64,000 nt of DNA from Styela clava (Eukaryota): NCBI RefSeq assembly GCF_964204865.1, contig NC_135251.1:15996001-16060000 (forward strand), written 5' to 3'. Below, piece after piece: positions 1 to 17,231 of this stretch (positions are counted from its first letter, which is position 1; every line of letters begins with the position of its first letter). A program made the position numbers and the translations under genes. The notes below the pieces were generated by a model, which was not told the DNA's origin, did no database searches, and worked only from the letters and a program-made list of their open reading frames with translations.

Positions 1-78
1 TACGTCTGCGTTGGAACTAAGGACATATTCTTTACTGCGTGATCTTTTTTACAAATAGATCTTTCCCGCAAAAAAAGG

Positions 79-151
79 CGCCCGATAAGGGACTTGAACC
101 CTTGACCGTTGGATTAAAAGTCCAACGCTCTACCGACTGAGCTAACCGGGC
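79..151 (-). tRNA. trnK-UUU: tRNA-Lys (anticodon TTT)
   Basis: GCCCGGTTAGCTCAGTCGGTAGAGCGTTGGACTTTTAATCCAACGGTCAAGGGTTCAAGTCCCTTATCGGGCG folds into a full cloverleaf with A and B boxes; T7 Pol III terminator at 70-76. Confidence 0.95.
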
Positions 152-1652
152 TACGGTACGCGTTAAAACAAAAGACATAACGGATGATAAGAATGAAAAT
201 TTTTGCAATAAGTGTGTTTGTGCATTGTGCTATGTCCATCGCCAGCTATACACAATCTAATCTTCTCGGAACAAAGACGCTACAGCGGCTGTGGTAACCG
301 GGCCACGGTCCGCATTAAAGCAAAAGACATAACGGATGATAAAAATCAATGATTTTGCAGCTAAAACAATTATAAGTGTGTTTGTGCATTGTGCTATGTC
401 CAACACCAGCTATACACAATCTAACGTTGATCTTCTCAGCGTGACCTATTTTTACAAATTGAACCTTTCCGGAACAAAGATGCGCCCGATAGCGCACTTG
501 ACTCCTTGATCGTTGGATAAAAAGTTCAACACTTTACCGATTAAGCTAACCGTGCTACGGTCCGCATTAAAATAAAAAGACATAACAGATGATAAAAATG
601 AATGATTTAGCAGCTAATACAATTATAAATAGGTGTGTTTGTGCATTGTGCTATGTCCAACGCCAGCTATACACAATCAAACGTTAATCTTCTCAGCGTG
701 ATCTATTTTTACAAATTGAACCTTTCCGGAACAAAGAGGCGCCCGATAGCGCACTTGACTCCTTGATCGTTGGATAAAAATTTCAACACTCTACCGATTG
801 AGCTAACTGGGCTACGGTCTGCATTAAAACCAAAGACATAACGGATGATAAAAGTCAATGATTTAGCAGCTAATACAATTATAAGTGTGTTTGTGCAATT
901 TGCTATGTCCAACGCCATCTATACACAATTCAATCTTCCCGGAACAAAGACGCTCTACCGACTGAGGTAACTCTACCGACTGAGCTAACCGGGCTACGGT
1001 CCGCGTTAAACGAAACATATACCGGATCGTCGGAATCTGTTTATTAAGCAGCTAATACAATTATAAGTGTGATTGTGCATTGTGCTATGTCCAACACCAG
1101 CTATACACAATCTAACGTTAATCTTCTCAGCGTGATTTATGTTTACAAATTGAACTATTCCGGAACAAAGGGGCGCCCGATAGCGCACTTGACTCCTTGA
1201 TCGTTGGATGAAAACTTCAACACTCTACCGATTGAGCTAACTGGGCTACGGTCTGCATTAAAACCAAAGACATAACGGATGATAAAAGTCAATGATTTAG
1301 CAGCTAATACAATTATAAGTGTCTTTGTGCAATTTGCTATGTCCAACACCAGCTATACACAATTTAATCTTCCCGGAACAAAGACGCTCCACCGGCTGTG
1401 GTAACCGGGCTACGGTGTGCAGTCAAACAAAAGACATGACTGATGATAAAAATCAATGATTTAGCAGCTAATACAATTATAAGTGTGTTTGTGCATTGTG
1501 CTATGTCCATCGCCAGCTATATACAATCTATTCTTCTCGGAACAAAGACGCTCCAGCGGCTGTGGTAACCGGGCTACGTCTGCGTTGGAACTAAGGACAT
1601 ATTCTTTACTGCGTGATCTTTTTTACAAATAGATCTTTCCCGCAAAAAAAGG

Positions 1653-1725
1653 CGCCCGATAAGGGACTTGAACCCTTGACCGTTGGATTAAAAGTCCAAC
1701 GCTCTACCGACTGAGCTAACCGGGC
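1653..1725 (-). tRNA. trnK-UUU: tRNA-Lys (TTT)
   Basis: Identical 73-nt cloverleaf followed by a T7 terminator. Confidence 0.95.
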
Positions 1726-3226
1726 TACGGTACGCGTTAAAACAAAAGACATAACGGATGATAAGAATGAAAATTTTTGCAATAAGTGTGTTTGTGCATT
1801 GTGCTATGTCCATCGCCAGCTATACACAATCTAATCTTCTCGGAACAAAGACGCTACAGCGGCTGTGGTAACCGGGCCACGGTCCGCATTAAAGCAAAAG
1901 ACATAACGGATGATAAAAATCAATGATTTTGCAGCTAAAACAATTATAAGTGTGTTTGTGCATTGTGCTATGTCCAACACCAGCTATACACAATCTAACG
2001 TTGATCTTCTCAGCGTGACCTATTTTTACAAATTGAACCTTTCCGGAACAAAGATGCGCCCGATAGCGCACTTGACTCCTTGATCGTTGGATAAAAAGTT
2101 CAACACTCTACCGATTAAGCTAACCGTGCTACGGTCCGCATTAAAATAAAAAGACATAACAGATGATAAAAATGAATGATTTAGCAGCTAATACAATTAT
2201 AAATAGGTGTGTTTGTGCATTGTGCTATGTCCAACGCCAGCTATACACAATCAAACGTTAATCTTCTCAGCGTGATCTATTTTTACAAATTGAACCTTTC
2301 CGGAACAAAGAGGCGCCCGATAGCGCACTTGACTCCTTGATCGTTGGATAAAAATTTCAACACTCTACCGATTGAGCTAACTGGGCTACGGTCTGCATTA
2401 AAACCAAAGACATAACGGATGATAAAAGTCAATGATTTAGCAGCTAATACAATTATAAGTGTGTTTGTGCAATTTGCTATGTCCAACGCCATCTATACAC
2501 AATTCAATCTTCCCGGAACAAAGACGCTCTACCGACTGAGGTAACTCTACCGACTGAGCTAACCGGGCTACGGTCCGCGTTAAACGAAACATATACCGGA
2601 TCGTCGGAATCTGTTTATTAAGCAGCTAATACAATTATAAGTGTGATTGTGCATTGTGCTATGTCCAACACCAGCTATACACAATCTAACGTTAATCTTC
2701 TCAGCGTGATTTATGTTTACAAATTGAACTATTCCGGAACAAAGGGGCGCCCGATAGCGCACTTGACTCCTTGATCGTTGGATGAAAACTTCAACACTCT
2801 ACCGATTGAGCTAACTGGGCTACGGTCTGCATTAAAACCAAAGACATAACGGATGATAAAAGTCAATGATTTAGCAGCTAATACAATTATAAGTGTCTTT
2901 GTGCAATTTGCTATGTCCAACACCAGCTATACACAATCTAATCTTCCCGGAACAAAGACGCTCCACCGGCTGTGGTAACCGGGCTACGGTGTGCAGTCAA
3001 ACAAAAGACATGACTGATGATAAAAATCAATGATTTAGCAGCTAATACAATTATAGGTGTGTTTGTGCATTGTGCTATGTCCATCGCCAGCTATATACAA
3101 TCTATTCTTCTCGGAACAAAGACGCTCCAGCGGCTGTGGTAACCGGGCTACGTCTGCGTTGGAACTAAGGACATATTCTTTACTGCGTGATCTTTTTTAC
3201 AAATAGATCCTTCCCGCAAAAAAAGG

Positions 3227-3299
3227 CGCCCGATAAGGGACTTGAACCCTTGACCGTTGGATTAAAAGTCCAACGCTATACCGACTGAGCTAACCGGGC
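3227..3299 (-). tRNA. trnK-UUU: tRNA-Lys (TTT), D-stem variant
   Basis: Same gene with GAGC>TAGC in the D stem; T7 terminator. Confidence 0.8.
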
Positions 3300-3527
3300 T
3301 ACGGTCCGCGTTAAAACAAAAGACATAACGGATGATAAAAATGAAAAATTTTGCAGCTAATACAATTATGGGTGTGTTTGTGCATTGTGCTATGTCCAAC
3401 ACCAGCTGTATACAATCTAATCTTCCCGGAACAAAGACGCTCCACCGGCTGTGGTAACCGGGCTACGGTCTGCGTATTATTTAATGCTTGATCTTTTTTA
3501 AAATTGAACCTTCCCGGAACAAAGAGG

Positions 3528-3600
3528 CGCCCGATAAGGGACTTGAACCCTTGACCGTTGGATTAAAAGTCCAACGCTCTACCGACTGAGCTAACCGGGC
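3528..3600 (-). tRNA. trnK-UUU: tRNA-Lys (TTT)
   Basis: Identical 73-nt cloverleaf; 3' flank CCTCTTTGTT. Confidence 0.92.
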
Positions 3601-4207
3601 CACGGTCCGTATAAAGCAAAAGACATAACGGATGGTAAAAATCAATGTTTTAGCAGCTAATACACATATAAGTGCGTTTCTGCATTGTGATATGTCCAAC
3701 GCCATCTATACACAATCCAATCTTCCCGGAACAAAGACGCTCTACCGACTGAGCTAACCGGGCCACGGTCCGCGTTAAACGAAACACATACCGGATCGTC
3801 GGAATCTGTTTATTAAGCAGCTAATACAATTATCACAATCTAACGTGAATCTTCTCAGCGTGATTTATTTTTACAAATTGAACCTTTCCGGAACAAAGAG
3901 GCGCCCGATAGCGCACTTGACTACTTGATCGTTGGATAAAAAGTTCAACACTCTACCGATTGATCTAACCGTCTACGGTCTGCATTAAAACAAAAGACAT
4001 AACAAATGATAAAAATGAATGATTTAGCAGCTAATACAAGTATAAATAAGTGTGTTTATGCATTGTGCTATGTCCAACGCCAGCTTATACACAATCTAAT
4101 CTTCCCGGAACAAAGACGCTCCACCGGCTGTGGTAACCGGGCTACGGTCTGCGTATTATTTAATGCGTGATCTTTTTTACAAATTGAACCTTCCCGGAAC
4201 AAAGAGG

Positions 4208-4280
4208 CGCCCGATAAGGGACTTGAACCCTTGACCGTTGGATTAAAAGTCCAACGCTCTACCGACTGAGCTAACCGGGC
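4208..4280 (-). tRNA. trnK-UUU: tRNA-Lys (TTT)
   Basis: Identical 73-nt cloverleaf. Confidence 0.92.
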
Positions 4281-4774
4281 CACGGTCCGCATTAAAGCAA
4301 AAGACATAACGGATGATAAAAATCAATGATTTTGCAGCTAATACAATTATAAGTGTGTTTGTGCATTGTGCTATGTCCAACACCAGCTATACACAATCTA
4401 ACGTCAATCTTCTCAGCGTGACCATATTTTCACAAATTGAAACTTTCCGGAACAAAGAGGCGCCCGATAGCGCACTTGACTCCTTGATCGTTGGATAAAA
4501 AGTTTAACACTCTACCGATTGAGCTAACCGGGCTACCGTCGGCATTAAAACAAAAGACATAACGGACGATAAAAATCAATGATTTAGCAGCTAATACAAT
4601 TATAAGTGTGTTTGTGCATTGTGCTATGTCCAACGCCAGCTATACGCAATCTAATCTTCTCGGAACAAAGACGCTCCAGCGGCTGTGGTAACCGGGCTAC
4701 GTCTGCGTTGGAACTAAGGACATATTCTTTACTGCGTGATCTTTTTTACAAATAGATTCTTCCCGCAAAAAAGG

Positions 4775-4847
4775 CGCCCGATAAGGGACTTGAACCCTTG
4801 ACCGTTGGATTAAAAGTCCAACGCTCTACCGACTGAGCTAACCGGGC
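4775..4847 (-). tRNA. trnK-UUU: tRNA-Lys (TTT)
   Basis: Identical 73-nt cloverleaf with a T6 terminator. Confidence 0.95.
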
Positions 4848-5887
4848 TACGGTACGCGTTAAAACAAAAGACATAACGGATGATAAGAATGAAAATTTTT
4901 GCAGCTAATACAATTATAAGTGTGTATAGATTGTGTATAGATGGCGTTGGACATAGCAAATTGCACAAACACACTTATAATTGTATTAGCTGCTAAATCA
5001 TTGACTTTTATCATCCGTTATGTCTTTGGTTTTAATGCAGACCGTAGCCCAGTTAGCTCAATCAAAAGATTAACGTTAGATTGTGTATAGCTGGTGTTGG
5101 ACATAGCACAATGCACAATCACACTTATAATTGTATTAGCTGCTTAATAAACAGATTCCGACGATCCGGTATATGTTTCGTTTAACGCGGACCGTAGCCC
5201 GGTTAGCTCAGTCGGTAGAGTTACCTCAGTCGGTAGAGCGTCTTTGTTCCGGGAAGATTGGATTGTGTATAGATGGCGTTGGACATAGCAAATTGCACAA
5301 ACACACTTATAATTGTATTAGCTGCTAAATCATTGACTTTTATCATCCGTTATGTCTTTGGTTTTAATGCAGACCGTAGCCCAGTTAGCTCAATCGGTAG
5401 AGTGTTGAAATTTTTATCCAACGATCAAGGAGTCAAGTGCGCTATCGGGCGCCTCTTTGTTCCGGAAAGGTTCAATTTGTAAAAATAGATCACGCTGAGA
5501 AGATTAACGTTTGATTGTGTATAGCTGGCGTTGGACATAGCACAATGCACAAACACACCTATTTATAATTGTATTAGCTGCTAAATCATTCATTTTTATC
5601 ATCTGTTATGTCTTTTTGTTTTAATGCGGACCGTAGCACGGTTAGCTTAATCGGTAGAGTGTTGAAATTTTTATCCAACGATCAAGGAGTCAAGTGCGCT
5701 ATCGGGCGCCTCTTTGTTCCGGAAAGGTTCAATTTGTAAAAATAGGTCACGCTGAGAAGATCAACGTTAGATTGTGTATAGCTGGTGTTTGACATAGCAC
5801 AATGCACAAACACACTTATAATTGTATTAGCTGCAAAATCATTGATTTTTATCATCCGTTATGTCTTTTGCTTTAATGCGGACCGTG

Positions 5888-5960
5888 GCCCGGTTAGCTC
5901 AGTCGGTAGAGCGTTGGACTTTTAATCCAACGGTCAAGGGTTCAAGTCCCTTATCGGGCG
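5888..5960 (+). tRNA. trnK-UUU: tRNA-Lys (TTT)
   Basis: Identical 73-nt cloverleaf on the plus strand. Confidence 0.92.
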
Positions 5961-7295
5961 CCTCTTTGTTCCGGGAAGGTTCAATTTTAAAAAAGATCAA
6001 GCATTAAATAATACGCAGACCGTAGCCCGGTTACCACAGCCGGTGGAGCGTCTTTGTTCCGAGAAGAATAGATTTTATATAGCTGGCGATGGACATGGCA
6101 CAATGCACAAACACACTTATAATTGTATTAGCTGCTAAATCATTGATTTTTATCATCAGTCATGTCTTTTGTTTGACTGCACACCGTAGCCCGGTTACCA
6201 CAGCCGGTGGAGCAACTTTGTTCCGGGAAGATTAGATTGTGTATAGCTGGTGTTGGACATAGCAAATTGCACAAAGACACTTATAATTGTATTAGCTGCT
6301 AAATCATTGACTTTTATCATCCGTTATGTCTTTGGTTTTAATGCAGACCGTAGCCCAGTTAGCTCAATCGGTAGAGTGTTGAAGTTTTCATCCAACGATC
6401 AAGGAGTCAAGTGCGCTATCGGGCGCCCCTTTGTTCCGGAATAGTTCAATTTGTAAAAATAAATCACGCTGAGAAGATTAACGTTAGATTGTGTATAGCT
6501 GGTGTTGGACATAGCACAATGCACAATCACACTTATAATTGTATTAGCTGCTTAATAAACAGATTCCGACGATCCGGTATATGTTTCGTCTAACGCGGAC
6601 CGTAGCCCGGTTAGCTCAGTCGGTAGAGTTACTTCAGTCGGTAGAGCGTCTTTGTTCCGGGAAGATTGGATTGTGTATAGATGGCGTTGGACATAGCAAA
6701 TTGCACAAACACACTTATAATTGTATTAGCTGCTAAATCATTGTCTTTTATCATCCGTTATGTCTTTGGTTTTAATGCAGACCGTAGCCCAGTTAGCTCA
6801 ATCGGTAGAGTGTTGAAATTTTTATCCAACGATCAAGGAGTCAAGTGCGCTATCGGGCGCCTCTTTGTTCCGGAAAGGTTCAATTTGTAAAAATAGATCA
6901 CGCTGAGAAGATTAACGTTTGATTGTGTATAGCTGGCGTTGGACATAGCACAATGCACAAACACACCTATTTATAATTGTATTAGCTGCTAAATCATTCA
7001 TTTTTATCATCTGTTATGTCTTTTTGTTTTAATGCGGACCGTAGCACGGTTAGCTTAATCGGTAGAGTGTTGAACTTTTTATCCAACGATCAAGGAGTCA
7101 AGTGCGCTATCGGGCGCCTCTTTGTTCCGGAAAGGTTCAATTTGTAAAAATAGGTCACGCTGAGAAGATCAACGTTAGATTGTGTATAGCTGGTGTTGGA
7201 CATAGCACAATGCACAAACACACTTATAATTGTATTAGCTGCAAAATCATTGATTTTTATCATCCGTTATGTCTTTTGCTTTAATGCGGACCGTG

Positions 7296-7368
7296 GCCCG
7301 GTTAGCTCAGTCGGTAGAGCGTTGGACTTTTAATCCAACGGTCAAGGGTTCAAGTCCCTTATCGGGCG
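7296..7368 (+). tRNA. trnK-UUU: tRNA-Lys (TTT)
   Basis: Identical 73-nt cloverleaf. Confidence 0.92.
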
Positions 7369-8016
7369 CCTCTTTGTTTCGGGAAGGTTCAATTTGTAAA
7401 AATGAACACGCATTAAAGAATACTCAGCCGTAGCCCGGTTACCACAGCCGGTGGAGCGTCTTTGTTCCGGGAAGATTAGATTGTGTATAAGCTGGCGTTG
7501 GACATAGCACAATGCATAAACACACTTATTTATACTTGTATTAGCTGCTAAATCATTCATTTTTATCATTTGTTATGTCTTTTGTTTTAATGCAGACCGT
7601 AGACGGTTAGATCAATCGGTAGAGTGTTGAACTTTTTATCCAACGATCAAGTAGTCAAGTGCGCTATCGGGCGCCTCTTTGTTCCGGAAAGGTTCAATTT
7701 GTAAAAATAAATCACGCAGAGAAGATTCACGTTAGATTGTGTATAACTGGTGTTGGACATTGCACAATGCACAAACACACTTATAATTGTATTAGCTGCT
7801 CAATAAACAGATTCCGACGATCCGGTATGTGTTTCGTTTAACGCGGACCGTAGCCCGGTTAGCTCAGTCGGTAGAGCGTCTTTGTTCCGGGAAGATTGGA
7901 TTGTGTATAGATGGCGTTGGACATATCACAATGCAGAAACACACTTATATGTGTATTAGCTGCTAAAACATTGATTTTTACCATGTGTTATATCTTTTGT
8001 TTCAATTCAGACCGTA

Positions 8017-8089
8017 GCCCGGTTAGCTCAGTCGGTAGAGCGTTGGACTTTTAATCCAACGGTCAAGGGTTCAAGTCCCTTATCGGGCG
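8017..8089 (+). tRNA. trnK-UUU: tRNA-Lys (TTT)
   Basis: Identical 73-nt cloverleaf. Confidence 0.92.
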
Positions 8090-8569
8090 CCTCTTTGTTT
8101 CGGGAAGGTTCAATTTGTAAAAATTAACACGCATTAAAGAATACGCAGCCGTAGCCCGGTTACCACAGCCGGTGGAGCGTCTTTGTTCCGGGAAGATTAG
8201 ATTGCGTATAGCTGGCGTTGGACATAGCACAATGCACAAACACACTTATAATTGTATTAGCTGCTAAATCATTGATTTTTATCGTCCGTTATGTCTTTTG
8301 TTTCAATGCAGACGGTAGCCCGGTTAGCTCAATCGGTAGAGTGTTAAACTTTTTATCCAACGATCAAGGAGTCAAGTGCGCTATCGGGCGCCTCTTTGTT
8401 CCGGAAAGTTTCAATTTGTAAAAATAGATCACGCTGAGAAGATTAACGTTAGATTGTATACAGCTGGTGTTGGACATAGCACAATGCACAAACACACTTA
8501 TAATTGTATTAGCTGCAAAATTTTTCATTTTTATCATCCGTTATGTCTTTTGTTTTAACGCGGACCGTA

Positions 8570-8642
8570 GCCCGGTTAGCTCAGTCGGTATAGCGTTGGA
8601 CTTTTTATCCAACTGTCAAGGGTTCAAGTCCCTTATCGGGCG
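8570..8642 (+). pseudogene. tRNA-Lys variant, probably non-functional
   Basis: D-stem mismatch (TAGC), anticodon loop CTTTTTA (internal T5), variable loop change; T7 downstream. Confidence 0.7.
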
Positions 8643-8924
8643 CCTTTTTTTGCGGGAAGGATCTATTTGTAAAAAAGATTACGCAGTAAAGAATATGTCC
8701 TTAGTTCCAACGCAGACGTAGCCCGGTTACCACAGCCGCTGTAGCGTCTTTGTTCCGAGAAGATTAGATTGTGTATAGCTGGCGATGGACATAGCACAAT
8801 GCACAAACACACTTATAATTGTATTAGCTGCTAAATCATTGATTTTTATCATCCGTTATGTATTTTGTTTTAATGCGCACCGTAGCCCGGTTAGCTCAGT
8901 CGGTAGAGCGTTGGACTTTTAATT

Positions 8925-9419
8925 AATTCTCGGCGAAAAAGACCTGTGCAAACAGCCTCACAGAACGTCGCACAACCTACCAACATAGTTGCTGATGTGA
9001 CTGAAGTATCGACCTCTGAATCTGAATCCAAATGTCTGCGAGAGATCAAAGACTGGTCAGAATGTGAGGACGTCGAAAAGATCAGCCCGCTCAAAACACC
9101 ACCATCGAGACCGGCCAGGCAATTGTTCCGACTCAAAGAAACATCCACCATCGGCAACACCCCGTTCAACCCGCCTTCAATGGGGAAAGCGTATGTTAAG
9201 GTGAAGATTCACAACATCGAGTCTTTTGATACAACAACATCATCGGTCTCCGAGGAAACACCAGATGAAACAACATCTGCTCCAGCATATCTGGAATCAA
9301 ATATGCAGCCGCCAATTGTCGATCTGACCAGTAAACGTAGCAGGGAGGACACAACATCTACAGACTCGTCAACATCCAAAACTACCAACAAGAGAGCAGT
9401 AGGCAAAAAGAAAAAATAA
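8925..9419 (+). CDS. C-terminal part of retroelement ORF1p (5'-truncated)
   Basis: ORF-track 157 aa, no in-frame stop back to the insertion junction; homologous to 10941-11315. Confidence 0.7.
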   Translation, partial: NSRRKRPVQTASQNVAQPTNIVADVTEVSTSESESKCLREIKDWSECEDVEKISPLKTPPSRPARQLFRLKETSTIGNTPFNPPSMGKAYVKVKIHNIESFDTTTSSVSEETPDETTSAPAYLESNMQPPIVDLTSKRSREDTTSTDSSTSKTTNKRAVGKKKK

Positions 9420-9586
9420 CAGTGAGTGCCTCAACCTAGGTTTCGACCGCGAACCATCAAAATTCCCTTCTCGTCTTTTCATTTCGGGCATGATATGTTA
9501 CAATTTGGCCTTTAAACAAATTTCCCCGATCAAACGCCCAGTTGATGGCGTTAAATCTCAACTACGGTAATACCATCTAACAAGTA

Positions 9587-9733
9587 ACGGAAGTGATGAA
9601 AGGAATTCTACCACAACACATGGTATACAAAATGGTGATCTCTATTACAAAGAGAATTGATCCATAAACTTCCGTCGGCACAGTCTGGGTATGAAGGCAT
9701 TTGGGCTGGATTCCAGACTTGTCGTCCTGATCC

Positions 9734-9735
<2 letters not shown>
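9587..9735 (+). ncRNA. Box C/D snoRNA-like structured module forming the 3' end of the retroelement
   Basis: ACGGA-A-GTGATGA (box C 9593-9599) ... CTGA (box D 9727-9730)-TCCGT, a perfect 5-bp terminal stem directly before poly(A); internal k-turn hairpin 9632-9665. Confidence 0.7.
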
Positions 9736-9780
<45 letters not shown>

Positions 9781-9974
9781 GTTGGACTTTTAATCCAACG
9801 GCCAAGGGTGCGAGTCCCTTATCGGGCCCCTCTTTGTTCCGGGAAGGTTCAACACACTTATTTTATAATTGTATTAGCTGCTAAATCATTGATTTTTATC
9901 ATCTGTTATGTCTTTTGTTTTAATGCAGACCGTAGCCCGGTTAGCTCAATCGGTAGAGTGTTGAACTTTTTATC

Positions 9975-10160
9975 AGTCAGTCAGTAATCAGTAGTTTATT
10001 TTCTCACCATACTAAATGCACACTTGATATACAAATTGCAATAAATAAATAAAAGGCATTTCAGGGTGAGGGGAGCCGCGAGAAACCAAATTTGGTTATC
10101 GAGCAGCGGCACCCATAAGCACAAGTCTAACAAGGAAATAATAACAAAAAAAAAGTCGAA
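9975..10160 (-). mobile_element. 3' end of a retroelement (LINE/SINE) with AATAAA and an (ACTG)n-like tail
   Basis: Minus strand reads ...ggtgagaaAATAAActactgattactgactgactg. A diverged second copy lies at ~62106-62560 (agtttatt..tcaccatact, gcatttcaggg, tggttatc..cagcg.caccc). Confidence 0.6.
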
Positions 10161-10221
10161 CTGTGTATATACAGTTCAATTCAATTAAAGAGTCCAGCTG
10201 CACACTAACACAAATGTATTT

Positions 10222-10263
10222 CTGTAACGTTTCGTCCGACCAGAGTCAGACTTCCTCAGACAA
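10222..10263 (-). ncRNA. Minimal type I hammerhead ribozyme (Penelope-like element type)
   Basis: Minus strand: TTGT-CTGAGGA-A-GTCTGAC-tctg-GTCGGAC-GAA-ACGT-T-ACAG. 7-bp stem II, palindromic ACGT stem III, 4-bp stem I. Confidence 0.6.
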
Positions 10264-11462
10264 GCAGTTTACAACAAGTATCATATATACGTTAATTTGA
10301 AAATAAATATAAATACGTCAAGGCATTCCAACCAGGTATGCCCAGTAATCTCGCGTTTCAACAACAACAAAACAAGAAACGACTCCGTGCACCAATAATC
10401 GTAGTAGCCATGACGATAGCTGCGTTATGGTAAAGTCACAATGGTACCATTGTGAGGTGACTGTGGCCGTATGTAGAACATTGTATGGTGCAGGGCTACA
10501 GTTGTTTAGGTATCAATGGTAAAAATGAAGTTTCACGAACAGGAAGCCTACCAGTAGTATGGTATGCATGCAACGATAGTACCGGTAGTCATAAATAATT
10601 TAACCTTTTATGGTAAGAAGAAAATTGAACTTCAGTGTGTAACTGGAAGGCACATGATCAATGAATAAATGGTATTCTACAAAATCAAGGTAGGATTAAA
10701 TTTCATGTGGAACTAACCACTTCATACAAAACATGGAAAAAGCAAAGGTAGGTAGGTTGATAAAAATCTAATGTCAGTCAATTTATGACATAACGATGCC
10801 AAATGTACAAAGATAAAAAAAACAATTTACAATCGAATATGGTTTAACATTAAAATGATGTTATTAAGGGTGCCAGAGACCAAGATCTTAGTAACTTAGA
10901 TCGGGCTCAAATATTACCAATATATAACTGACTAAATTACATGACATCACAGTGCATGAACTATGCATGGTTTCTTCTTACACTAAAACGACAAGATCAA
11001 CCCAGGAAATTGAAACAGAGCTCTACAATCGGAAACACTCCCTTTCGTCCACCTCAGAAAGGGAGTGCATATGTGAAAGTGCTAATCCATAATTATGAGA
11101 GGAGCGACTCACTATTTAGCGATTCAACAGATAAAATATTATCTGCCCCTGCACACTTGGAAAGTAACCAAACATTAACAAAAATCGTGGACATAACAGA
11201 TTCAAACTTGGAAAATACGGATTTTAATACTAAAAGGATAAGACAAAGCACTTCATCGGAGTCGTCGTTCTCAACGATTCCAGAGGAGAAAAGAACACTG
11301 AAGAAAAAGAAATGACGTGAGTGCCAAATTTTTCTGTTTCGTTAAACACGTACCCTCGCTACGTCATATTATTGACATTAGATAAGTTTAAAGAAACGAA
11401 TTATGTAAACAGCTACCACAAAGCTCAGTTATATTGAGTTGATTACTTACTTAATTTGTGCA

Positions 11463-14400
11463 ATGGCATTAATCAAAATAGTATCTTTAAATTCAAATGG
11501 TTTTCAACATCGCTTGGATACTCTAAGAAATTTCATTGGACACGAGAGGCCTAATATCTTGTGTGTGCAAGAGGTGCACAGAATAGAAAAAACATCGGTC
11601 GCGCAGTGGGCGGAATCTTTGGGTTATAATGTATTCGTTAACACGCTGGACAAATTTGATAATTATTATACTAGCTTTAGACAAGGGACTCTGATCATGA
11701 CAAAGTTTGAAAATACTATAATCCCGGCCACATATACAATTCATATACTGCATCGTCTGGATAGCATCGAAATTGAAATTGACAATAATGTAATCAAGAT
11801 ATTCAACGTATATGCACCAGCTCAGAATGGACCGGAGAAAACTAAATTATTTGAAAACTTGGTGGCAACCCTAAAAAACTATACCGACTCATACGACCTA
11901 CTAATTGTAGGGGACTTCAATTGCGTTCTGGAACCACTCGACACGTTAATTACGAAAAACTTCAAACTACGGCCGCCAGAGAAAATACTTAAAAGTTTCA
12001 TCCAAAACAATAATATATTTGATACCTACTGTAAAAAATACCCCCAAAAACAAATATTTACTCATTATTTCGGAAAACAAGGACGCAGGATTGACAACAT
12101 CTACAACTCATATAATCCGCAACATTTGATATCACATATCGGGCACATACCAAACACTATAGCTGACCATCTCCTCTGTCCCACAATCAAATTAAAGCAA
12201 ATCAAGAAAATCCGCTGGGGGAAAGGGACCTGGCGGAACAACCTAACGCTCTACCACGACCCTATCTTTATTAGTATTATAAAAAACGTATATGAACATG
12301 CTCTGGCCGACATGGAGAACTTTAACAATATACAAGATTGGTGGGATTATTTAAAAAACAAAATTAAAAAAGTTTCGATTGCTTACTCTAAAACCAAAAC
12401 CCTGGACAAAAAAAAACAATATTGCCCGAATTCGTAAACAAATAGATGTCACCATCAATGAAGGCTTAGAGGGAAATGTAATTAAGATTGGAAATCTGAA
12501 AGCACAACTTAAATTAATGTTAGATGAGCGTAAACAATTGGATTTATTGATGGCTAATATGGAAAATTTAGAGAAAAATGAAAAACCAACAAGGATTTTC
12601 TACTCAAAAATAAAACAAAGAGCGAAACAAACTACTATAGAAAAACTAAAATCCAAACACAACACAATGACCTCAAACGAAGACGGGGTCATGTCGGAAA
12701 TCGAAGAATTCTATACAGAGCTGTGGAAAAATGAAAATGAGCCAGATATACGCCACCAGAAATACTATCTTAAATTAATAGGCCAAACTCAAATAAACGA
12801 AGAAGACAACAACCTCCTTGAACAACCGGTTACCCGGGAAGAGATCTACAATGCAATACAATGACTGCGTAACAACAAAACTCCCGGCATCGATGGTCTT
12901 TCGAAAGAGTTTTATACTACATTCTGGGACATAATAAAAACGCAGCTTATACAACTAATAAATAATATATTACTTTTCGGCCCATTTCCCAAATCATCAT
13001 CTATCGCTAAGGTAAAGTTACTATACAAGAAAAACGACGAGACGAAACTAAAAAACTGGCGACCTATTACCACTCTTAATATGGACTACAAAATCATCTC
13101 CAAAATCATAGTGAATCGTTTGGCCCCTATACTGAATAAAATTATAAGTCCCACACAAAAATGTTCCCTTTTGGATCGAAATATGTCGGATATCCATTAT
13201 AACATCGATGCCGTCATAAGGCATTGTAAACAAAAGGAAATACCAGGAACCATCGTCCTAATTGATAACCTTAAAGCATTTGATCGAGTAAATCACAATT
13301 TTCTATTTCGAACCCTGCAATATATCGGACTCGGGAACAAGACTTTGAAAGCTAAAAAAAATATGTATCGCGACAATAAAACTATCGTAGACTTAAACGG
13401 TAGACTATCTAGAGAGATAAATATAAGGAGAGGCATAAAGCAAGGATGCCCCTTGAGTATGCTCCTTTACGCCGTTATAGTTGAACTTCTGGCAAGATCA
13501 ATACGCGAAAATACAAACATACGCGGAATAAAGCTCGGACGCCATGAGTTTAAATTGGACCAGTTTGCAGATGACGTCACCTTCGCTGTACGAGACCAAA
13601 ATTCAATTGCACAAATCTTCCAAGAACTATATAACTTCCAATTAGCTTCCGGACAACAAATTAATCAGGATAAGACAGAAATATTATGTATTACAAAAAC
13701 ATCCCAAAATTTAATAACCAGGTCCCAATACAACAAATATATAAAAGAAACAGTAAAGATACTTGGAATAAAATTTGGACGTAAACAAATAGATAGAATA
13801 TGGGACGAAATAAAAACCAAGCTGATTGGAACCTTGAATTCTATAAAACCCAGACATCTCACTTGGCATGGAAAAATTTTAGTAATCAACTCTCTTATAA
13901 TGTCTATAGTAACTTTCCATGCAAAAGTAAAGACCATTTCGCCAAAAACAACCAAAGAAATAGAAAGCATACTATTTAAATTCCTCTGGCTGCCGGAAAA
14001 GATCGAGGCAATTGGAAGAAAAAAGCTCCAACTACCATTGACGGATGGGGGTTTAAACATGGTGGAGGTAAACTCCAAGATTGAGACATGTCAGGTAGAA
14101 AAGCTGGAAGCCTTTATGATTGGTAAAGACTTAAATCAATTCTGGCACCACGAAGGCCTGTATTCATTAGGATCAAAAATCAAATTTATAAATAAGGATT
14201 TATACTCCAACTCCACTCCCCACAGCAACGTAATCCCTATATACTGGGCTCATCTGTTCAAGATCTTTCAGAAAATTGACCTCACTCGTGACCAGTGGAT
14301 AACAGCAAGGCATAGACACATATACCAATCACTTAAAGAATATACTAGACAACAGTTACGGGAACAGCCACCACAACAACTAGCCATAAACTGGGAGGAA

Positions 14401-14946
14401 GTACACCTCTTCAATACAAGCTATATATCAAATGTAGAAAGAATTGTCTCCTATCGAATCACCCGAAATGGATACATCTTCGGGGAAAAGAAGCGGGGGA
14501 TGACGATCCGGTTCAACCCATCGGGCAAACTGAAAATCCTAAACTGTAAGTTATGGAAGGACAAATCGGACAACACCAAGCACATCTTTCTCAATTGTAA
14601 AACAACAGGTAATTATATTACAGAAATCTTGAACTGCCTCAATGCCATACTGGACACCCAAATTATCATAAATAAAGAACAGATTTTTTATAATAGTTAC
14701 AATGGCCCACATCAAATTGCTGTGACCAAAGCCTTTGTTCTACTGAAAAAGAACGTAATTAAATTAAAACTGCAACTAGACACCCTGGATCGATATCTGG
14801 CCCCCACAGACGATGACATCATACCCAAAACTGTAACCCAAATCATGGAATTCCTCATAATGATAAAACATAAATTCAATGACGTGCAACCTTTAGGACT
14901 AAGGAGTAACTGGAAGGAAATACTAAACGGCTATCTGACGGTCTAG
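11463..14946 (+). pseudogene. L1/Tx1 ORF2 (endonuclease-reverse transcriptase) with two lesions
   Basis: ATG 11463; frameshift at the A9 run ~12408-12416; in-frame TGA 12862-12864; otherwise continuous (ORF pieces 11439-12437, 12379-12864, 13081-14946). Confidence 0.9.
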
Positions 14947-15062
14947 CAAAATAAAATAGCAACTTGGGAACTTTTAAACAGCCACCATAAATGGTAGACC
15001 AAACCAAAATTCAAAACTGCTCGACGAACTTTGTTTTTAGCCCCGATAATACATTCAATACA

Positions 15063-15376
15063 GCGGAAATGATGAATCGGGATCTTCTCGGTGGATGTCA
15101 TGCTGCGTTATACGCGGTATGTACGGAAGCCGGGGTGGCCGAAGTTGTGCCCTGCTCTGCATGGCATGGACGGAAGCCCCAGGTTTAAGCGTATGCATTG
15201 CATATGTAGAAGCCCGTGGTGGAAGTCTGTGCTTTGCTGATGCGCGGCACATACTGAGGCCCACGGAAGTGTATGACTACTGCATGCAGTAGCATGCTTA
15301 TGAAGCGATTGACCGATATAACTCGGATATGACGTGTCTTAAAGACACTGATCTGAGTCTGGGAAAACTGATCTGC
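15063..15376 (+). ncRNA. Box C/D snoRNA-like structured module forming the 3' end of the L1/Tx1 element
   Basis: GCGGA-A-ATGATGA (box C 15069-15075) ... CTGA (box D 15368-15371)-TCTGC terminal stem, 2 nt before the A tail; k-turn hairpin 15321-15358 and many internal hairpins. Confidence 0.7.
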
Positions 15377-16311
15377 CATAAAATATAAAAAAAATAAAAT
15401 AAAAAAAAACCAACGGCTTTCGGCGCCGTTTGAAAGTTTTGGAAAGTTTCATTAAATATACTAATCCAAATGTTCTTTGTGTGCAAGAAGCACATAGAAT
15501 AGATAAAGACTCAGTGATTCTTTGGGCAAATGATTTCGGATACAATATACATTTCAATACTATAGGAAAATTCGACAAGCATCACACAAATTCTAAGCAA
15601 GGAACCGCTATTTTAGTCAAAATAGAAAACTCAATATTGCCGTCAACTTATACAATCCATATAAAGGACCGCATAGCATGTGATAGCATAGAAATTCGTG
15701 TCGATGATCACATTGTAAAAAATTTTAATGTATACGCCCCGGCTCAAGACAGACCGATTAAGACCGAATTCTACCAGAATCTGGTAAAAATACTGATAAA
15801 CTACTGTGACACCGACGAGATGTTACTCTTTGGCGATGTCAATCTAGTACTAGACCAAGCCGACACCTCAAACCCCAAAAATTTCAAAATTCGGGCCCAG
15901 AAAGAATCTTTAAACAATTTATTGAGCAGAACAACTTTTCGGACACCTTCAGAAAGAAATACCCCAAAAAACAAATTTATACATTTCTATTCCGATCACA
16001 TGGCCGTCGAATTGACAATATATATAATTCTAAAAATTTGGACCACCTAATTTCAAGAATTGAACACACAGCAAACACAATATCCGATCACCTGCTGTGT
16101 ACGGTGATTGAACTTGTGCAAATGAAAAAGGTCCGATGGGGGAGGGGCACGTGGCGCAATAATTTATCACTATACAGAGACCCAAAATATGTGGAAATTA
16201 CAAAAAACGTATACAAGGCCGCTCTTGCTGAATTAGACAATTATGACGTAATACAAGAATGGTGGGATATTTTGAAAATGAGAATAAAAAAGAGCACAGT
16301 AGCATACTCGA

Positions 16312-17231
16312 CAGGGGTCACCGGCTGTGTGGCCATCGTTAGTGTGCTAAGCGTTAGGTTCGCAGGTTAGAATCTCATGCGAGGATAGTTATGTGCAAGA
16401 GACTTGCTGGACCCCTTGCTGTTGTTGGGATGGCTTCCTTTGCCATCAAGTCTATGCTTACGAAAACGAATAACTTACCTATTCCAATACCCGACATGAA
16501 ATGGTAACCAGACGAGAGGCCTTGGTTCGCCATATGGTTAAGCCGTCTTATCGACCATCTTCTCCCCCGGGATAAATATGTAAATCCCATCCTATCCTGA
16601 GTTTATGTCAAAAATGTTGATTCACAAAGATAGGTTGAACGAAACAATGGTCTCGTAAAATAGAATTGCTGTATGATTTGAATCGCGAGCTTTTTCTGCC
16701 CGTACTGCGCTGGATAGTTAGCGCGGTAGCGTGACAAGCCGTGAAATATCTTTTCGCTTTGCCGTCGCTACAATCGCCCCACAAATGAGACACGCGCAGG
16801 CTGTTTTCATGTTGGTAAAAATATATCCACCCCCAATCATCATGAAAATGGTGGGTTTTTCATCGTTTTCTGCCATTTTTCTTTGGAATCAATAAATATA
16901 TTATTGCTGCTCCACAAACCAACGGACAAGAAAAAGCGCGGGTTCGTAGTAAGTGATATCAGCGTGATGTCATAATTGGAAGAGTGTTAATTGACCCGTC
17001 ACATTACTGAGGGTCAAATAAAAATCAGGTTGTTGGCTACAATAATTAATATAGTGCCATTCCCGATTCCCATATAAATGTGATTTATACAAGAATAGCA
17101 GGACAAAATTTAATCGATGCAGCTTACTCATAAGCGCCGTTATTAAGCTCTGTTTGGAACAGACCTGCGGGCGACTCATATGGTCTTCACGGGCGACTTG
17201 GTGCCCACGGGCAACGCGTTAGTGACCCCTG
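16312..17231. mobile_element. hAT-like non-autonomous DNA element inserted in the second L1
   Basis: TIRs caggggtcac / gtgacccctg; the L1 reading frame (AYSKNK) resumes after it; degenerate TSD ctc(taa)ga. Confidence 0.65.
16322..16598 (+). mobile_element. Probable tRNA-derived SINE nested in the hAT element
   Basis: A-box/B-box-like head (tggccatcgttag...ggttagaatct) and (ATCCT)n-like 3' tail (aaatcccatcctatcct). Confidence 0.5.

What the first reader, a model, noticed from the sequence alone, without database searches (positions are those of the whole stretch)
9587..15376. Two related L1/Tx1 retroelements end in a box C/D snoRNA-like module directly before the poly(A) tail
Seen: short element ACGGA-A-GTGATGA(9593) ... 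CTGA(9727)-TCCGT-A44; long element GCGGA-A-ATGATGA(15069) ... CTGA(15368)-TCTGC-CAT-A-rich tail. Both have textbook C/D k-turn geometry (5-bp stem, 3-nt bulge, tandem G.A, U-U, G-C). The stems differ but still pair (A-T vs G-C at the outer pair, G-C vs G.T inside), while the interiors (149 vs 314 nt) share little primary sequence. Neither module has an AATAAA before the tail. Established: such motifs bind SNU13/15.5K, NOP56/58 and fibrillarin, block exonucleases and direct RNA to Cajal bodies/nucleoli. Inference: this family may use a snoRNP to define and protect its RNA 3' end, to mark the template for ORF2p, or to localise near tRNA gene clusters. I know of no description of this for LINE 3' UTRs.
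Basis: partly seen in the sequence, partly recalled or inferred. Interest (0 to 1): 0.92.

Follow-up and report, generated by a model that had tools for sequence, protein, structure and literature searches.

The report
Retrotransposon tail mimics box C/D snoRNA

Summary
Both elements sit in anticodon loops of tRNA-Lys(UUU) genes. Each ends in stem(5 bp)-N-RUGAUGA ... CUGA-stem, directly before the A tail.

This is not chance and not a single capture:
- The genome holds at least 129 and 176 candidate copies of the two module types.
- Of 88 D-box-terminated ends fetched, 63 carry a perfect C box with a fully pairing stem at exact spacing. Shuffled upstream sequence gives 0.05.
- The motif persists across elements whose ORF2 C-terminal halves are only about 50% (one 36%) identical.
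- Only the positions that the C/D consensus leaves free (N, R) vary.
- The outer stem pair covaries: G-C, A-U or G.U.
- 3b:3n is always U.U and 4b:4n always G:C, which is the box C/D signature.
- A second, internal kink-turn is the most conserved block and also covaries.

No Rfam family matches. Eighty distant L1/Tx1-like relatives from metagenomes lack the motif, and many end in AATAAA plus poly(A).

Protein binding, 3'-end processing and localisation are untested.

My best reading is a protein-nucleated kink-turn handle that serves as the family's cis-acting 3' element. A full snoRNP is possible.

First-reader notes flagged the same motif on other pieces of this genome; none was followed up.

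The parts
8885..8922 (+). 5' part of a tRNA-Lys(UUU) gene up to the last anticodon-loop base; target of the short element
   Evidence: Read directly. Identical to the intact tRNA-Lys genes of the array.
8923..9779 (+). Short ORF1-only non-autonomous element (857 bp) with a 14-bp target-site duplication cgttggacttttaa (8909-8922 and 9780-9793)
   Evidence: Full-length copies at 90-98% identity lie elsewhere in the genome (L002, L003, L005, L018, L019), plus 71-73% subfamilies.
8946..9419 (+). Small ORF (157 aa), 45% identical to the 124-aa first ORF of the long element; S/T-rich, no known domain
9587..9735 (+). Short-type 3' module (149 nt) closed by the C/D-like terminal kink-turn
9587..9599 (+). 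5' stem half ACGGA, spacer A, C box GTGATGA
   Evidence: UGAUGA is kept in 21 of 22 distinct copies; only the spacer and stem base 1 vary between subfamilies.
9632..9665 (+). Internal kink-turn hairpin of the short type: ATGG-T-GA-TCTCT / loop / AGAGA-ATT-GA-T-CCAT (D'-like then C'-like order; U.U then C-G)
   Evidence: Read directly. GGTGATCT is invariant and the flanks nearly so in alignment A1. The helices are predicted by RNAalifold.
9727..9735 (+). D box CTGA and 3' stem half TCCGT
9736..9779 (+). A44 tail, starting directly after the stem
9780..9828 (+). Second TSD copy and the 3' part of the interrupted tRNA-Lys gene
9975..15409 (+). Long APE+RT element inserted in the anticodon arm of another tRNA-Lys gene (5' flank 9935-9974, 3' flank ccaacgg from 15410). 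In this copy ORF2 is in three frame pieces.
10941..11315 (+). First small ORF (124 aa) of the long element
11439..14946 (+). ORF2 (Exo_endo_phos endonuclease, then RVT_1 reverse transcriptase), broken into 11439-12437, 12379-12864 and 13081-14946 in this copy. Intact 1153-1185-aa versions exist elsewhere in the genome.
15063..15376 (+). Long-type 3' module (314 nt here, 306-342 nt in the family); a highly structured domain closed by the terminal C/D-like kink-turn
   Evidence: Single-sequence fold -131.7 kcal/mol, z = -6.0, includes the terminal stem.
15063..15075 (+). 5' stem half GCGGA, spacer A, C box ATGATGA
15322..15357 (+). Internal kink-turn hairpin of the long type: CTCGGA-TAT-GA-C-GTGTC / TTAAA / GACAC-T-GA-TCTGAG (family TCCGAG)
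   Evidence: This is the most conserved block of the module. C-stem pair 2 covaries U-A 22 / A-U 3; G.A and A.G are 29/29. Predicted independently by RNAalifold.
15368..15376 (+). D box CTGA and 3' stem half TCTGC (family TCCGC)
15377..15409 (+). Heterogeneous A-rich tail (CAT AAAATATAAAAAAAATAAAATAAAAAAAAA), containing one AATAAA

Best explanation
The last 140-340 nt of these site-specific APE+RT (L1/Tx1-like) retrotransposons, and of their ORF1-only non-autonomous derivatives, form a plus-strand RNA domain. Its 5' and 3' ends pair and bring RUGAUGA and CUGA together into a box C/D-class kink-turn, ending exactly where the A tail begins. A second kink-turn hairpin lies inside.

Shown: the motif, its conservation under selection, its covariation, and its position.

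Inferred: box C/D-class k-turns (3b:3n U.U, 4b:4n G:C) do not fold without protein. So the terminal motif is most likely folded and occupied by a host L7Ae-family protein (SNU13/15.5K class). The resulting RNP would be the family's cis-acting 3' element. It would mark the RNA as the template that ORF2p must start on ('stringent' 3'-end recognition, which would explain why the non-autonomous partner shares only the termini). It would also shield the body's 3' end, so that tails always start right after the stem.

Whether NOP58, NOP56 and fibrillarin also join is left open.
For: 1. Presence and geometry at the stated coordinates.
2. Abundance. There are 129 and 176 first-look candidates for the two module types. 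The pattern CTGATCCGY+A7 is found 62 times, against 0 for the reversed control.
3. An independent test. Thirty-nine ends were retrieved by the 3' pattern alone. Twenty of them carry a perfect C box with a 5/5 pairing stem at exact spacing. Overall 63 of 88 ends do, against 0.05 of 88 with shuffled upstream sequence.
4. Depth. Module-bearing elements have ORF2 C-halves 95% to about 50% identical, and one 36%. Many sit behind intact 1153-1185-aa ORF2s.
5. Selection pattern. Motif columns have mean pairwise identity 0.98, against 0.80 for the rest of the module (permutation p about 0.0003). The internal k-turn is the most conserved block. Only N and R of N-R-UGAUGA vary.
6. Covariation:
- Outer terminal pair: G-C 17, A-U 10, G.U 1 in the long type, with one deep switch and a second possible one on a tree built without the stem columns.
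- Internal k-turn C stem: U-A 22, A-U 3.
- RNAalifold recovers both helices unprompted, and 13 pairs have compensatory changes.
7. G.U pairs in the plus strand (17 of 22 short-type copies) would be C.A in the minus strand, so the plus-strand RNA is the folded species.
8. 3b:3n U.U in 28/28 and 4b:4n G:C in 28/28 is the box C/D signature described in PMC5689011.
9. Short and long modules share only the termini, as LINE/SINE partners share tails (PMC3472496).
10. The tail always begins at or within a few bases of the stem end, and differs between near-identical copies.
Against: - No RNA, protein-binding or transposition data exist.
- Four of the five stem pairs never vary, so support for pairing rests on one pair per stem plus wobble changes.
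- In the window's short copy the single-sequence minimum-energy fold pairs ACGGAAGU with an internal ACUUCCGU instead of the terminal stem, and z is only -1.1.
- Helices abut both boxes, so there is no snoRNA-like single-stranded guide.
- Conservation of exact sequence could reflect direct reading by ORF2p with no host protein involved.
- About two thirds of tails start with a short mixed A-rich linker, often AAUAAG- or AAUAAA-like. Canonical polyadenylation from a tail-embedded signal is therefore not excluded.
- All evidence comes from one genome.
Confidence: 0.55

Rival explanations
1. Full snoRNP reading. The terminal motif assembles SNU13, NOP58, NOP56 and fibrillarin. Exonucleases trim the transcript back to this particle, and a non-canonical poly(A) polymerase then adds the tail, so the 3' end forms without a cleavage/polyadenylation signal. 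The particle routes the RNA through Cajal bodies or nucleoli, near the small-RNA gene arrays that the family targets. Vertebrate telomerase RNA, with its H/ACA 3' domain, is an analogue.
For: - The motif meets the whole C/D core consensus, including stem II U.U and G-C, which snoRNP assembly needs beyond 15.5K binding (consensus from PMC5689011; the stem II requirement is from my own knowledge of Watkins et al. 2002).
- The body ends 5 nt after CUGA, as mature snoRNAs do. Tail starts are untemplated and mixed.
- No AAUAAA lies before the tail. In contrast, about 30 distant L1/Tx1-like relatives with recognisable tails mostly have AATAAA 10-30 nt upstream of the tail.
- The short type has C, D'-like, C'-like and D in the canonical order.
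- The targets seen (tRNA genes; splice-donor-like GTAAG/GTGAG sequences that earlier notes assign to SL RNA genes) are small-RNA genes.
Against: - No binding, localisation or small-RNA data exist.
- No Rfam snoRNA family matches.
- The long type has a variable A-rich stretch where a guide would be, and its inner k-turn is in C-then-D order.
- Helices directly flank the boxes.
- AAUAAA- or AAUAAG-like words inside many tails could act as ordinary signals.
Confidence: 0.25
2. Self-contained reading. The two kink-turns are architectural or are read directly by the element's own ORF2p (or ORF1p). No host L7Ae-family protein is involved, and the likeness to box C/D is convergent.
For: - Stringent-type LINEs need a specific 3' structure for their own RT (PMC3472496).
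- The exact sequence CGGA/UCCG recurs in both k-turn C stems of the long type. This looks like a sequence-specific protein site rather than a generic stem.
- The inner k-turn is more conserved than the terminal one.
Against: - The U.U / G:C combination is the class of k-turn that stays unfolded without an L7Ae-type protein (PMC5689011).
- ORF1p and the ORF2p C-terminal part have no recognisable RNA-binding or L7Ae-like domain.
- SNU13 is abundant and should bind any accessible consensus C/D motif.
Confidence: 0.15
3. Passenger reading. A host box C/D snoRNA gene was picked up once by 3' transduction and is carried along, perhaps still as a working guide RNA, without any role in retrotransposition.
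For: 3' transduction is common in LINEs (my own knowledge). Elements that target small-RNA genes could land upstream of a snoRNA gene.
Against: - A passenger would decay between families. Instead the boxes and stems are the most conserved columns across ORF2 lineages about 50% identical, while the interior is replaced entirely between the short and long types.
- No Rfam match.
- No conserved guide in the long type.
Confidence: 0.04
4. Chance resemblance in an otherwise conserved 3' UTR.
For: Short motifs (CTGA, TGATGA) are common.
Against: Shuffled controls give 0.05 of 88 ends against 63 observed. There is no other full match in 128 kb of window strands or in 334 kb of unrelated LINE loci next to tails. 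A second k-turn and covariation are also present.
Confidence: 0.01

Closest known systems
Box C/D snoRNA core motif, especially long structured members such as U3, U8 and U13 with a terminal C(')/D k-turn plus an inner B/C-type k-turn
   Same: RUGAUGA near the 5' end and CUGA 5 nt from the 3' end. A 5-bp terminal stem, a 3-nt bulge, tandem G.A, U.U at 3b:3n and G:C at 4b:4n. There is also a second inner k-turn.
   Different: It lies inside a retrotransposon 3' UTR and is followed by an A tail. No Rfam family matches. There is no evident guide, and helices abut the boxes. In the long type the inner k-turn is in C-then-D order. Protein binding and accumulation as a small RNA are untested.
Stringent-type LINE 3' tails (3'-end stem-loops shared by LINE/SINE partners; a monocot L1 lineage with a conserved 3'-end structure, PMC3472496)
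   Same: A conserved RNA structure at the very 3' end, next to the tail. It is shared between an autonomous element and a non-autonomous partner that otherwise differ.
   Different: Here the shared element is a discontinuous motif formed by the two ends of a 140-340-nt domain, and it equals a host snoRNP core motif. Known tails are simple hairpins with no known host-RNP mimicry.
Vertebrate telomerase RNA with its 3' H/ACA snoRNA-like domain (my own knowledge)
   Same: The RNA template of a reverse transcriptase carries a snoRNA-type domain at its 3' end. That domain gives stability, defines the 3' end and directs nuclear-body trafficking.
   Different: It is H/ACA (dyskerin) rather than C/D. 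It is a cellular gene, not a mobile element. The function here is only inferred.
sno-lncRNAs and 5' snoRNA-capped, 3'-polyadenylated (SPA) lncRNAs (my own knowledge)
   Same: snoRNP assembly on a long Pol II transcript blocks exonucleases and sets an RNA end.
   Different: Those derive from intronic host snoRNAs. Here the motif would cap the 3' end of a retrotransposon RNA and is followed by a tail.
snoRNA retrogenes and platypus snoRTE elements (snoRNA joined to an RTE LINE tail; my own knowledge, term seen)
   Same: snoRNA-type sequence and LINE machinery are combined in one retroposed unit.
   Different: There the snoRNA is the cargo or head and the LINE tail is a separate 3' piece. Here the LINE's own tail is the sno-like motif, conserved in autonomous elements.
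Tx1-clade target-specific APE-type LINEs (PMC4640811)
   Same: An APE+RT element with precise insertion into multicopy small-RNA genes (here the tRNA-Lys anticodon loop, with a TSD).
   Different: Clade membership was not tested by phylogeny here. I found no Tx1 description that mentions a C/D-like 3' end.

Membership tests
Box C/D snoRNA | C box RUGAUGA close to the 5' end of the RNA domain | tested here: met
   GTGATGA at 9593 and ATGATGA at 15069. UGAUGA is kept in 27 of 29 long-type rows and 21 of 22 short-type rows.
Box C/D snoRNA | D box CUGA a few nt from the 3' end | tested here: met
   CTGA at 9727 and 15368, 5 nt before the tail. 28/28 in the long-type alignment. Loci L061-L100 were selected on this feature; L001-L060 were not.
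Box C/D snoRNA | Terminal 4-5-bp stem that brings C and D together, supported by covariation | tested here: met
   A 5/5 pairing stem at exact spacing in 63 of 88 ends, against 0.05 in shuffles. The outer pair is G-C 17 / A-U 10 / G.U 1. RNAalifold predicts the stem. Only one of the five pairs covaries.
Box C/D snoRNA | k-turn signature of the class: 3-nt bulge, tandem G.A/A.G, 3b:3n U.U, 4b:4n G:C (PMC5689011) | tested here: met
   Spacer N plus RU gives the 3-nt bulge. U.U 28/28 and G:C 28/28. The criterion was read. This is by sequence only; no structure probing.
Box C/D snoRNA | Internal D' and C' boxes in the order C-D'-C'-D | tested here: inconclusive
   The short type has a GUGA ... UUGAUCC k-turn hairpin in D'-then-C' order (9632-9665). 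The long type's inner k-turn is AUGACG ... CUGA in C-then-D order (15322-15357).
Box C/D snoRNA | Antisense guide of 10-21 nt ending next to box D or D', complementary to rRNA or snRNA | tested here: inconclusive
   In the long type the stretch before box D is variable and A-rich. In the short type it is conserved but predicted to be paired.
Box C/D snoRNA | Homology to a described snoRNA family | tested here: not met
   No snoRNA match at Rfam gathering scores in the window. Only chance-level hits (E 4-8, about 10 bits) at a permissive threshold.
Box C/D snoRNA | Accumulates as a discrete small RNA bound by SNU13, NOP56, NOP58 and fibrillarin, located in the nucleolus or Cajal bodies | not testable with these tools
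There are no protein-RNA tools.
Stringent-type LINE 3' recognition tail | Conserved RNA structure at the extreme 3' end, directly before the tail repeat or poly(A) | tested here: met
Stringent-type LINE 3' recognition tail | Tail shared between the autonomous element and non-autonomous partners that differ elsewhere | tested here: met
   The ORF1-only 857-bp family and the APE+RT elements share only the terminal motif. Which autonomous family drives the short-type module was not identified.
Stringent-type LINE 3' recognition tail | Required in cis for reverse transcription, bound by the element's RT | not testable with these tools
   Needs a retrotransposition assay or binding assays.
L1-group / Tx1-like target-specific non-LTR retrotransposon | APE-type endonuclease followed by reverse transcriptase | tested here: met
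   Exo_endo_phos E 1.5e-12 and RVT_1 E 1.5e-24.
L1-group / Tx1-like target-specific non-LTR retrotransposon | Precise insertion into a multicopy gene, with a target-site duplication | tested here: met
   tRNA-Lys(UUU) anticodon loop with a 14-bp TSD for the short element, and the same arm of a second tRNA-Lys for the long one.
L1-group / Tx1-like target-specific non-LTR retrotransposon | RT phylogeny places it in the Tx1 clade | not tested
   No reference Tx1 proteins were available by reference. The nearest database protein is 51% identical and unnamed.
SECIS element | AUGA/GA quartet, a helix of about 9-12 bp to an apical AAR motif, and an in-frame UGA in the upstream ORF | tested here: not met
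   The inner k-turn has AUGA/GA, but only a 5-bp helix before the loop. No SECIS hit in Rfam. Intact ORF2 copies have no internal stops.

The most novel reading that the evidence does not exclude
A retrotransposon lineage has built a genuine box C/D snoRNP into the 3' end of its RNA. The particle defines the 3' end without a cleavage/polyadenylation signal (exonucleolytic trimming to the particle, then non-canonical A-tailing). It carries the template through Cajal bodies or nucleoli to the small-RNA gene arrays the family inserts into. This would be a mobile-element counterpart of the H/ACA domain of vertebrate telomerase RNA.
Probability: 0.28. Interest if true: 0.88.

Novelty: new variant of a known kind. 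Interest (0 to 1): 0.72.

Why it matters
How LINE RNAs are chosen as templates, and how their 3' ends are made and protected, is understood for only a few elements.

Here a whole group of apparently active, site-specific LINEs and their parasites keeps a host snoRNP core motif at the exact 3' end of the template. The motif is conserved more strictly than the reverse transcriptase itself.

If a host k-turn protein or a full snoRNP is used, several things would follow:
- A new way for mobile elements to exploit a housekeeping RNP-assembly pathway.
- A second, independent case (after telomerase RNA) of a reverse-transcriptase template stabilised by a snoRNA-type domain.
- A possible explanation for how elements driven from snRNA-, SL- or tRNA-type loci obtain a usable 3' end.

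The motif is small and discrete, so box and stem mutants with compensatory changes make the idea directly testable.

Tried and rejected
Readings rejected:
- Known snoRNA family: no Rfam match at gathering or permissive thresholds.
- Chance: rejected by shuffles and by scans of the window and of unrelated LINE loci.
- Single capture: rejected by copy number and by depth across ORF2 lineages.
- Minus-strand or DNA-level signal: unlikely, because G.U pairs are on the plus strand.
- SECIS: the helix length is wrong, Rfam gives no hit, and ORF2 has no in-frame stops.
- ORF1p as an L7Ae-like k-turn binder: no Pfam family and no usable Atlas hit. The protein is S/T-rich and looks disordered. This does not exclude binding.

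Searches that gave little:
- Cross-species test. Eighty L1/Tx1-like relatives from metagenome contigs (23-35% identity) show no C/D-type end. About 30 of them have recognisable tails, mostly behind AATAAA. They are too distant to say when the motif arose.
- Literature. Seven full-text searches found no paper linking non-LTR elements with kink-turns or C/D motifs at their 3' ends. The library is incomplete.

- The count of structure pairs was not used, to avoid typing a 360-character structure string. I made the same counts in scripts.

The consensus lines that the alignment tools print for the 3' UTR modules were not used.

Full report
**What is there**

The window opens with an array of ten intact tRNA-Lys(UUU) genes. 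Two further copies of that gene are interrupted in the anticodon arm.

The first interrupted copy holds an 857-bp element (8923-9779):
- It is flanked by a 14-bp duplication, cgttggacttttaa.
- It carries only a 157-aa ORF and a 3' UTR.
- It ends in A44.

The second holds a 5.4-kb element (about 9975-15409):
- It has a related 124-aa first ORF, 45% identical.
- It has an ORF2 with an APE endonuclease and a reverse transcriptase. In this copy ORF2 is split into three frame pieces.
- It ends in an A-rich tail.

**The observation**

- Short element: ACGGA-A-GTGATGA at 9587-9599, and CTGA-TCCGT at 9727-9735.
- Long element: GCGGA-A-ATGATGA at 15063-15075, and CTGA-TCTGC at 15368-15376.

With one spacer base, the strand that carries box C has a 3-nt bulge (N, R, U). 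Then the GA of box C faces the GA of box D, then U faces U, then G pairs with C. That is the standard kink-turn layout.

The two interiors are unrelated by blastn. No poly(A) hexamer precedes either tail at a usable distance. The long copy has one AATAAA inside its tail.

**Is it more than chance?**

On both strands of the window, the two modules are the only places with RUGAUGA, CUGA and a fully pairing 5-nt stem at this spacing.

In the genome:
- The short-type module has 129 first-look candidates and the long-type 176.
- The 3' pattern CTGATCCGY followed by seven A occurs 62 times, against 0 for the reversed control.

I fetched 100 loci. Of 88 D-box-terminated ends, 63 have a perfect C box preceded by a stem half that pairs 5/5 with the 3' end at the exact spacing. 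Shuffling the upstream 500 nt gives 0.05 of 88.

The cleanest test uses the 39 ends retrieved by the 3' pattern alone, with no 5' information. Twenty of them have the perfect partner. Most of the rest look like truncated or decayed copies, or carry one mismatch in the C box.

Module lengths vary widely with the same termini: 141-151, 170-195, 280, 306-342 and 477 nt.

**Depth and selection**

Elements carrying the module have ORF2 C-terminal halves that are 95%, 70% and about 50% identical to the window copy, and in one case 36%. Many modules lie directly behind intact ORF2s of 1153-1185 aa (matched by coordinates to L032, L034, L036, L037, L040, L052, L069, L070, L080 and L100). So these families look recently active.

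I restricted the conservation test to long-type copies found by BLAST and not selected on the motif:
- Stem, C-box and D-box columns have mean pairwise identity 0.98.
- The other 267 columns have 0.80 (permutation p about 0.0003).
- The single most conserved block is the inner kink-turn.

What does vary is telling. The spacer is A, U or C. The first box base is A or G. These are the N and R of the consensus.

**Structure and covariation**

RNAalifold, given only the alignments, predicts the terminal stem in both types and both helices of the inner kink-turn of the long type. Thirteen pairs there have compensatory changes.

Terminal stem:
- The outer pair is G-C in 17, A-U in 10 and G.U in 1 distinct long-type copies.
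- It is G.U in 17 and A-U in 4 short-type copies.
- The only A.C is in a decayed copy whose C box is also mutated.
- On a tree built from the interior only, G-C and A-U separate at the deepest split. One G-C copy is nested in the A-U clade, so there are one or two independent double changes.

Inner kink-turn of the long type (CUCGGA-UAU-GA-C-GUGUC ... GACAC-U-GA-UCCGAG):
- G.A and A.G are kept in 29/29.
- The C stem switches U-A to A-U in three copies.

The remaining stem pairs are invariant, so covariation support is real but thin.

The many G.U pairs fit folding of the plus-strand RNA only.

The window's long module folds at -131.7 kcal/mol (z = -6.0) with the terminal stem in the minimum-energy structure.

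The window's short module is weaker. Its z is -1.1, and its minimum-energy fold uses an alternative 8-bp helix between ACGGAAGU and an internal ACUUCCGU. The alignment-based fold prefers the terminal stem.

**Which kind of kink-turn?**

According to Ashraf, Huang and Lilley (PMC5689011), box C/D k-turns are marked by 3b:3n = U.U and 4b:4n = G:C. They stay unfolded unless an L7Ae-type protein binds. Ribosomal k-turns differ.

The terminal motif here has U.U in 28/28 and G:C in 28/28, with -1b:-1n = A:U. On sequence it belongs to the protein-dependent box C/D class.

The inner k-turns deviate:
- Long type: C.U then G:C.
- Short type: U.U then C:G, in D'-then-C' order.

**What it is not**

- It matches no Rfam family, snoRNA or other.
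- It is not a SECIS element (short helix, no in-frame stops).
- It is not a host snoRNA locus. Every copy read sits at an element's end before an A tail.
- The small first ORF has no recognisable domain.

**Tails**

The element body always ends at the 3' stem half; one long-type clade has one extra C. In 16 of 57 BLAST-derived copies, pure A follows at once. In the others a short mixed A-rich linker comes first, for example G, AG, AAU, AAUAG, AAAUAAG, CAGUU or CAAGAGU. The linker differs between copies that are 97-99% identical.

This fits tailing of an RNA whose 3' end is fixed at the stem. But some linkers are AAUAAA- or AAUAAG-like, so a tail-embedded ordinary signal in master copies is not excluded.

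Among 80 distant L1/Tx1-like relatives from metagenome contigs, none has a C/D-type end. About 30 show a tail at the expected distance, most of them behind AATAAA.

**Mechanism**

Shown: a selected, plus-strand, protein-dependent-class kink-turn that closes the 3' UTR domain exactly at the body/tail junction, shared by autonomous and non-autonomous elements whose interiors differ.

Inferred: a host L7Ae-family protein (SNU13/15.5K) folds and occupies it. This RNP then acts as the cis-acting 3' element, both as recognition handle for ORF2p and as protection of the 3' end. I give this about 0.55.

The alternatives and my odds:
It is attractive because the family's targets are small-RNA genes and no upstream poly(A) signal exists. 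It has no direct support (about 0.25).
- Direct reading by the element's own proteins without host factors: about 0.15.
- A hitch-hiking host snoRNA, or chance, is very unlikely.

**Comparison and novelty**

The closest known things are:
- the box C/D core motif itself;
- the 'stringent' 3' tails that LINEs share with their SINEs (PMC3472496);
- target-specific APE-type Tx1-clade elements (PMC4640811);
- from my own knowledge, the H/ACA domain of vertebrate telomerase RNA, snoRNA-ended lncRNAs, and platypus snoRTE.

I found no description of a LINE whose own 3' end is a box C/D-type kink-turn. The library is incomplete. I class it as a new variant of a known kind.

**Earlier scan notes**

First-reader notes on other pieces of this genome report the same kind of 3' end (s1-825766, s1-822899, s1-822901, s1-822908, s1-825932). 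None had a follow-up. My genome-wide copies agree with them.

A followed-up note (s1-817479) calls the genome a tunicate and describes related families in spliced-leader RNA genes. I did not verify the organism. I did see GTAAG/GTGAG-type sequences directly after the tails of several copies.

**Limits**

- All evidence is from one genome.
- There are no RNA or protein data.

Noticed in passing
window 9417-9428 and 11313-11325: GTGAGTGCC, a 5' splice-site-like word, follows the stop codon of the small first ORF in both elements.
   Followed up: no
window 15120-15270 (long module interior); alignment A2 columns 70-240: Four degenerate repeats of a unit like UAC-GGAAGCC-(N)GGG-(N)-GGAAGU lie inside the long-type module. 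Each could form a small hairpin flanked by GGAA/GGAA purine loops. The block UAUGUACGGAAGCC is among the most conserved.
   Followed up: partly
window 9568-9576 and 15044-15052; also L047-L060: A conserved AAUACCAUC word lies about 10-20 nt upstream of the 5' stem half in both module types (AAUACAUUC in the window's long copy). A CACCAUAAAUGGUAG hairpin lies further upstream in several families (also at 14974-14990).
   Followed up: no
window 9587-9594 with 9668-9675: Alternative 8-bp helix ACGGAAGU/ACUUCCGU in the short module. It competes with the terminal stem in the single-sequence fold. The internal UCCGU repeats the 3' stem half, so a conformational switch is possible.
   Followed up: partly
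tails of L002-L060: Short mixed A-rich linkers (AAUAG, AAAUAAG, CAGUU, GAAUGAGAAAAUU ...) sit between the stem and the pure poly(A). They differ between near-identical copies. AAAUAAG recurs in different subfamilies.
   Followed up: partly
window 15410-16370: Right after the long element's tail, the tRNA remnant ccaacggc is followed by tttcggcgcc... and ORFs at 15430-16050 and 16038-16370, which may mark a further element. A similar GGTTTCGGCGC word follows the tail in L032.
   Followed up: no
Different families sharing the C/D-like end therefore have different small-RNA gene targets.
   Followed up: partly
L004 (G000:C14:1686236-1689423, minus strand): A nested arrangement. An ORF2 only 36% identical to the window's is followed by a 5'-truncated short element, and then by a 142-nt module with C box AUGAUGU and the usual CUGAUCCGU end. 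The most distant family seen so far therefore also has the motif.
   Followed up: partly
window 77-8644: Ten intact tRNA-Lys(UUU) genes lie in two opposed blocks (six on the minus strand, four on the plus). Spacers include pseudo-tRNA fragments, for example 8720-8750.
   Followed up: no
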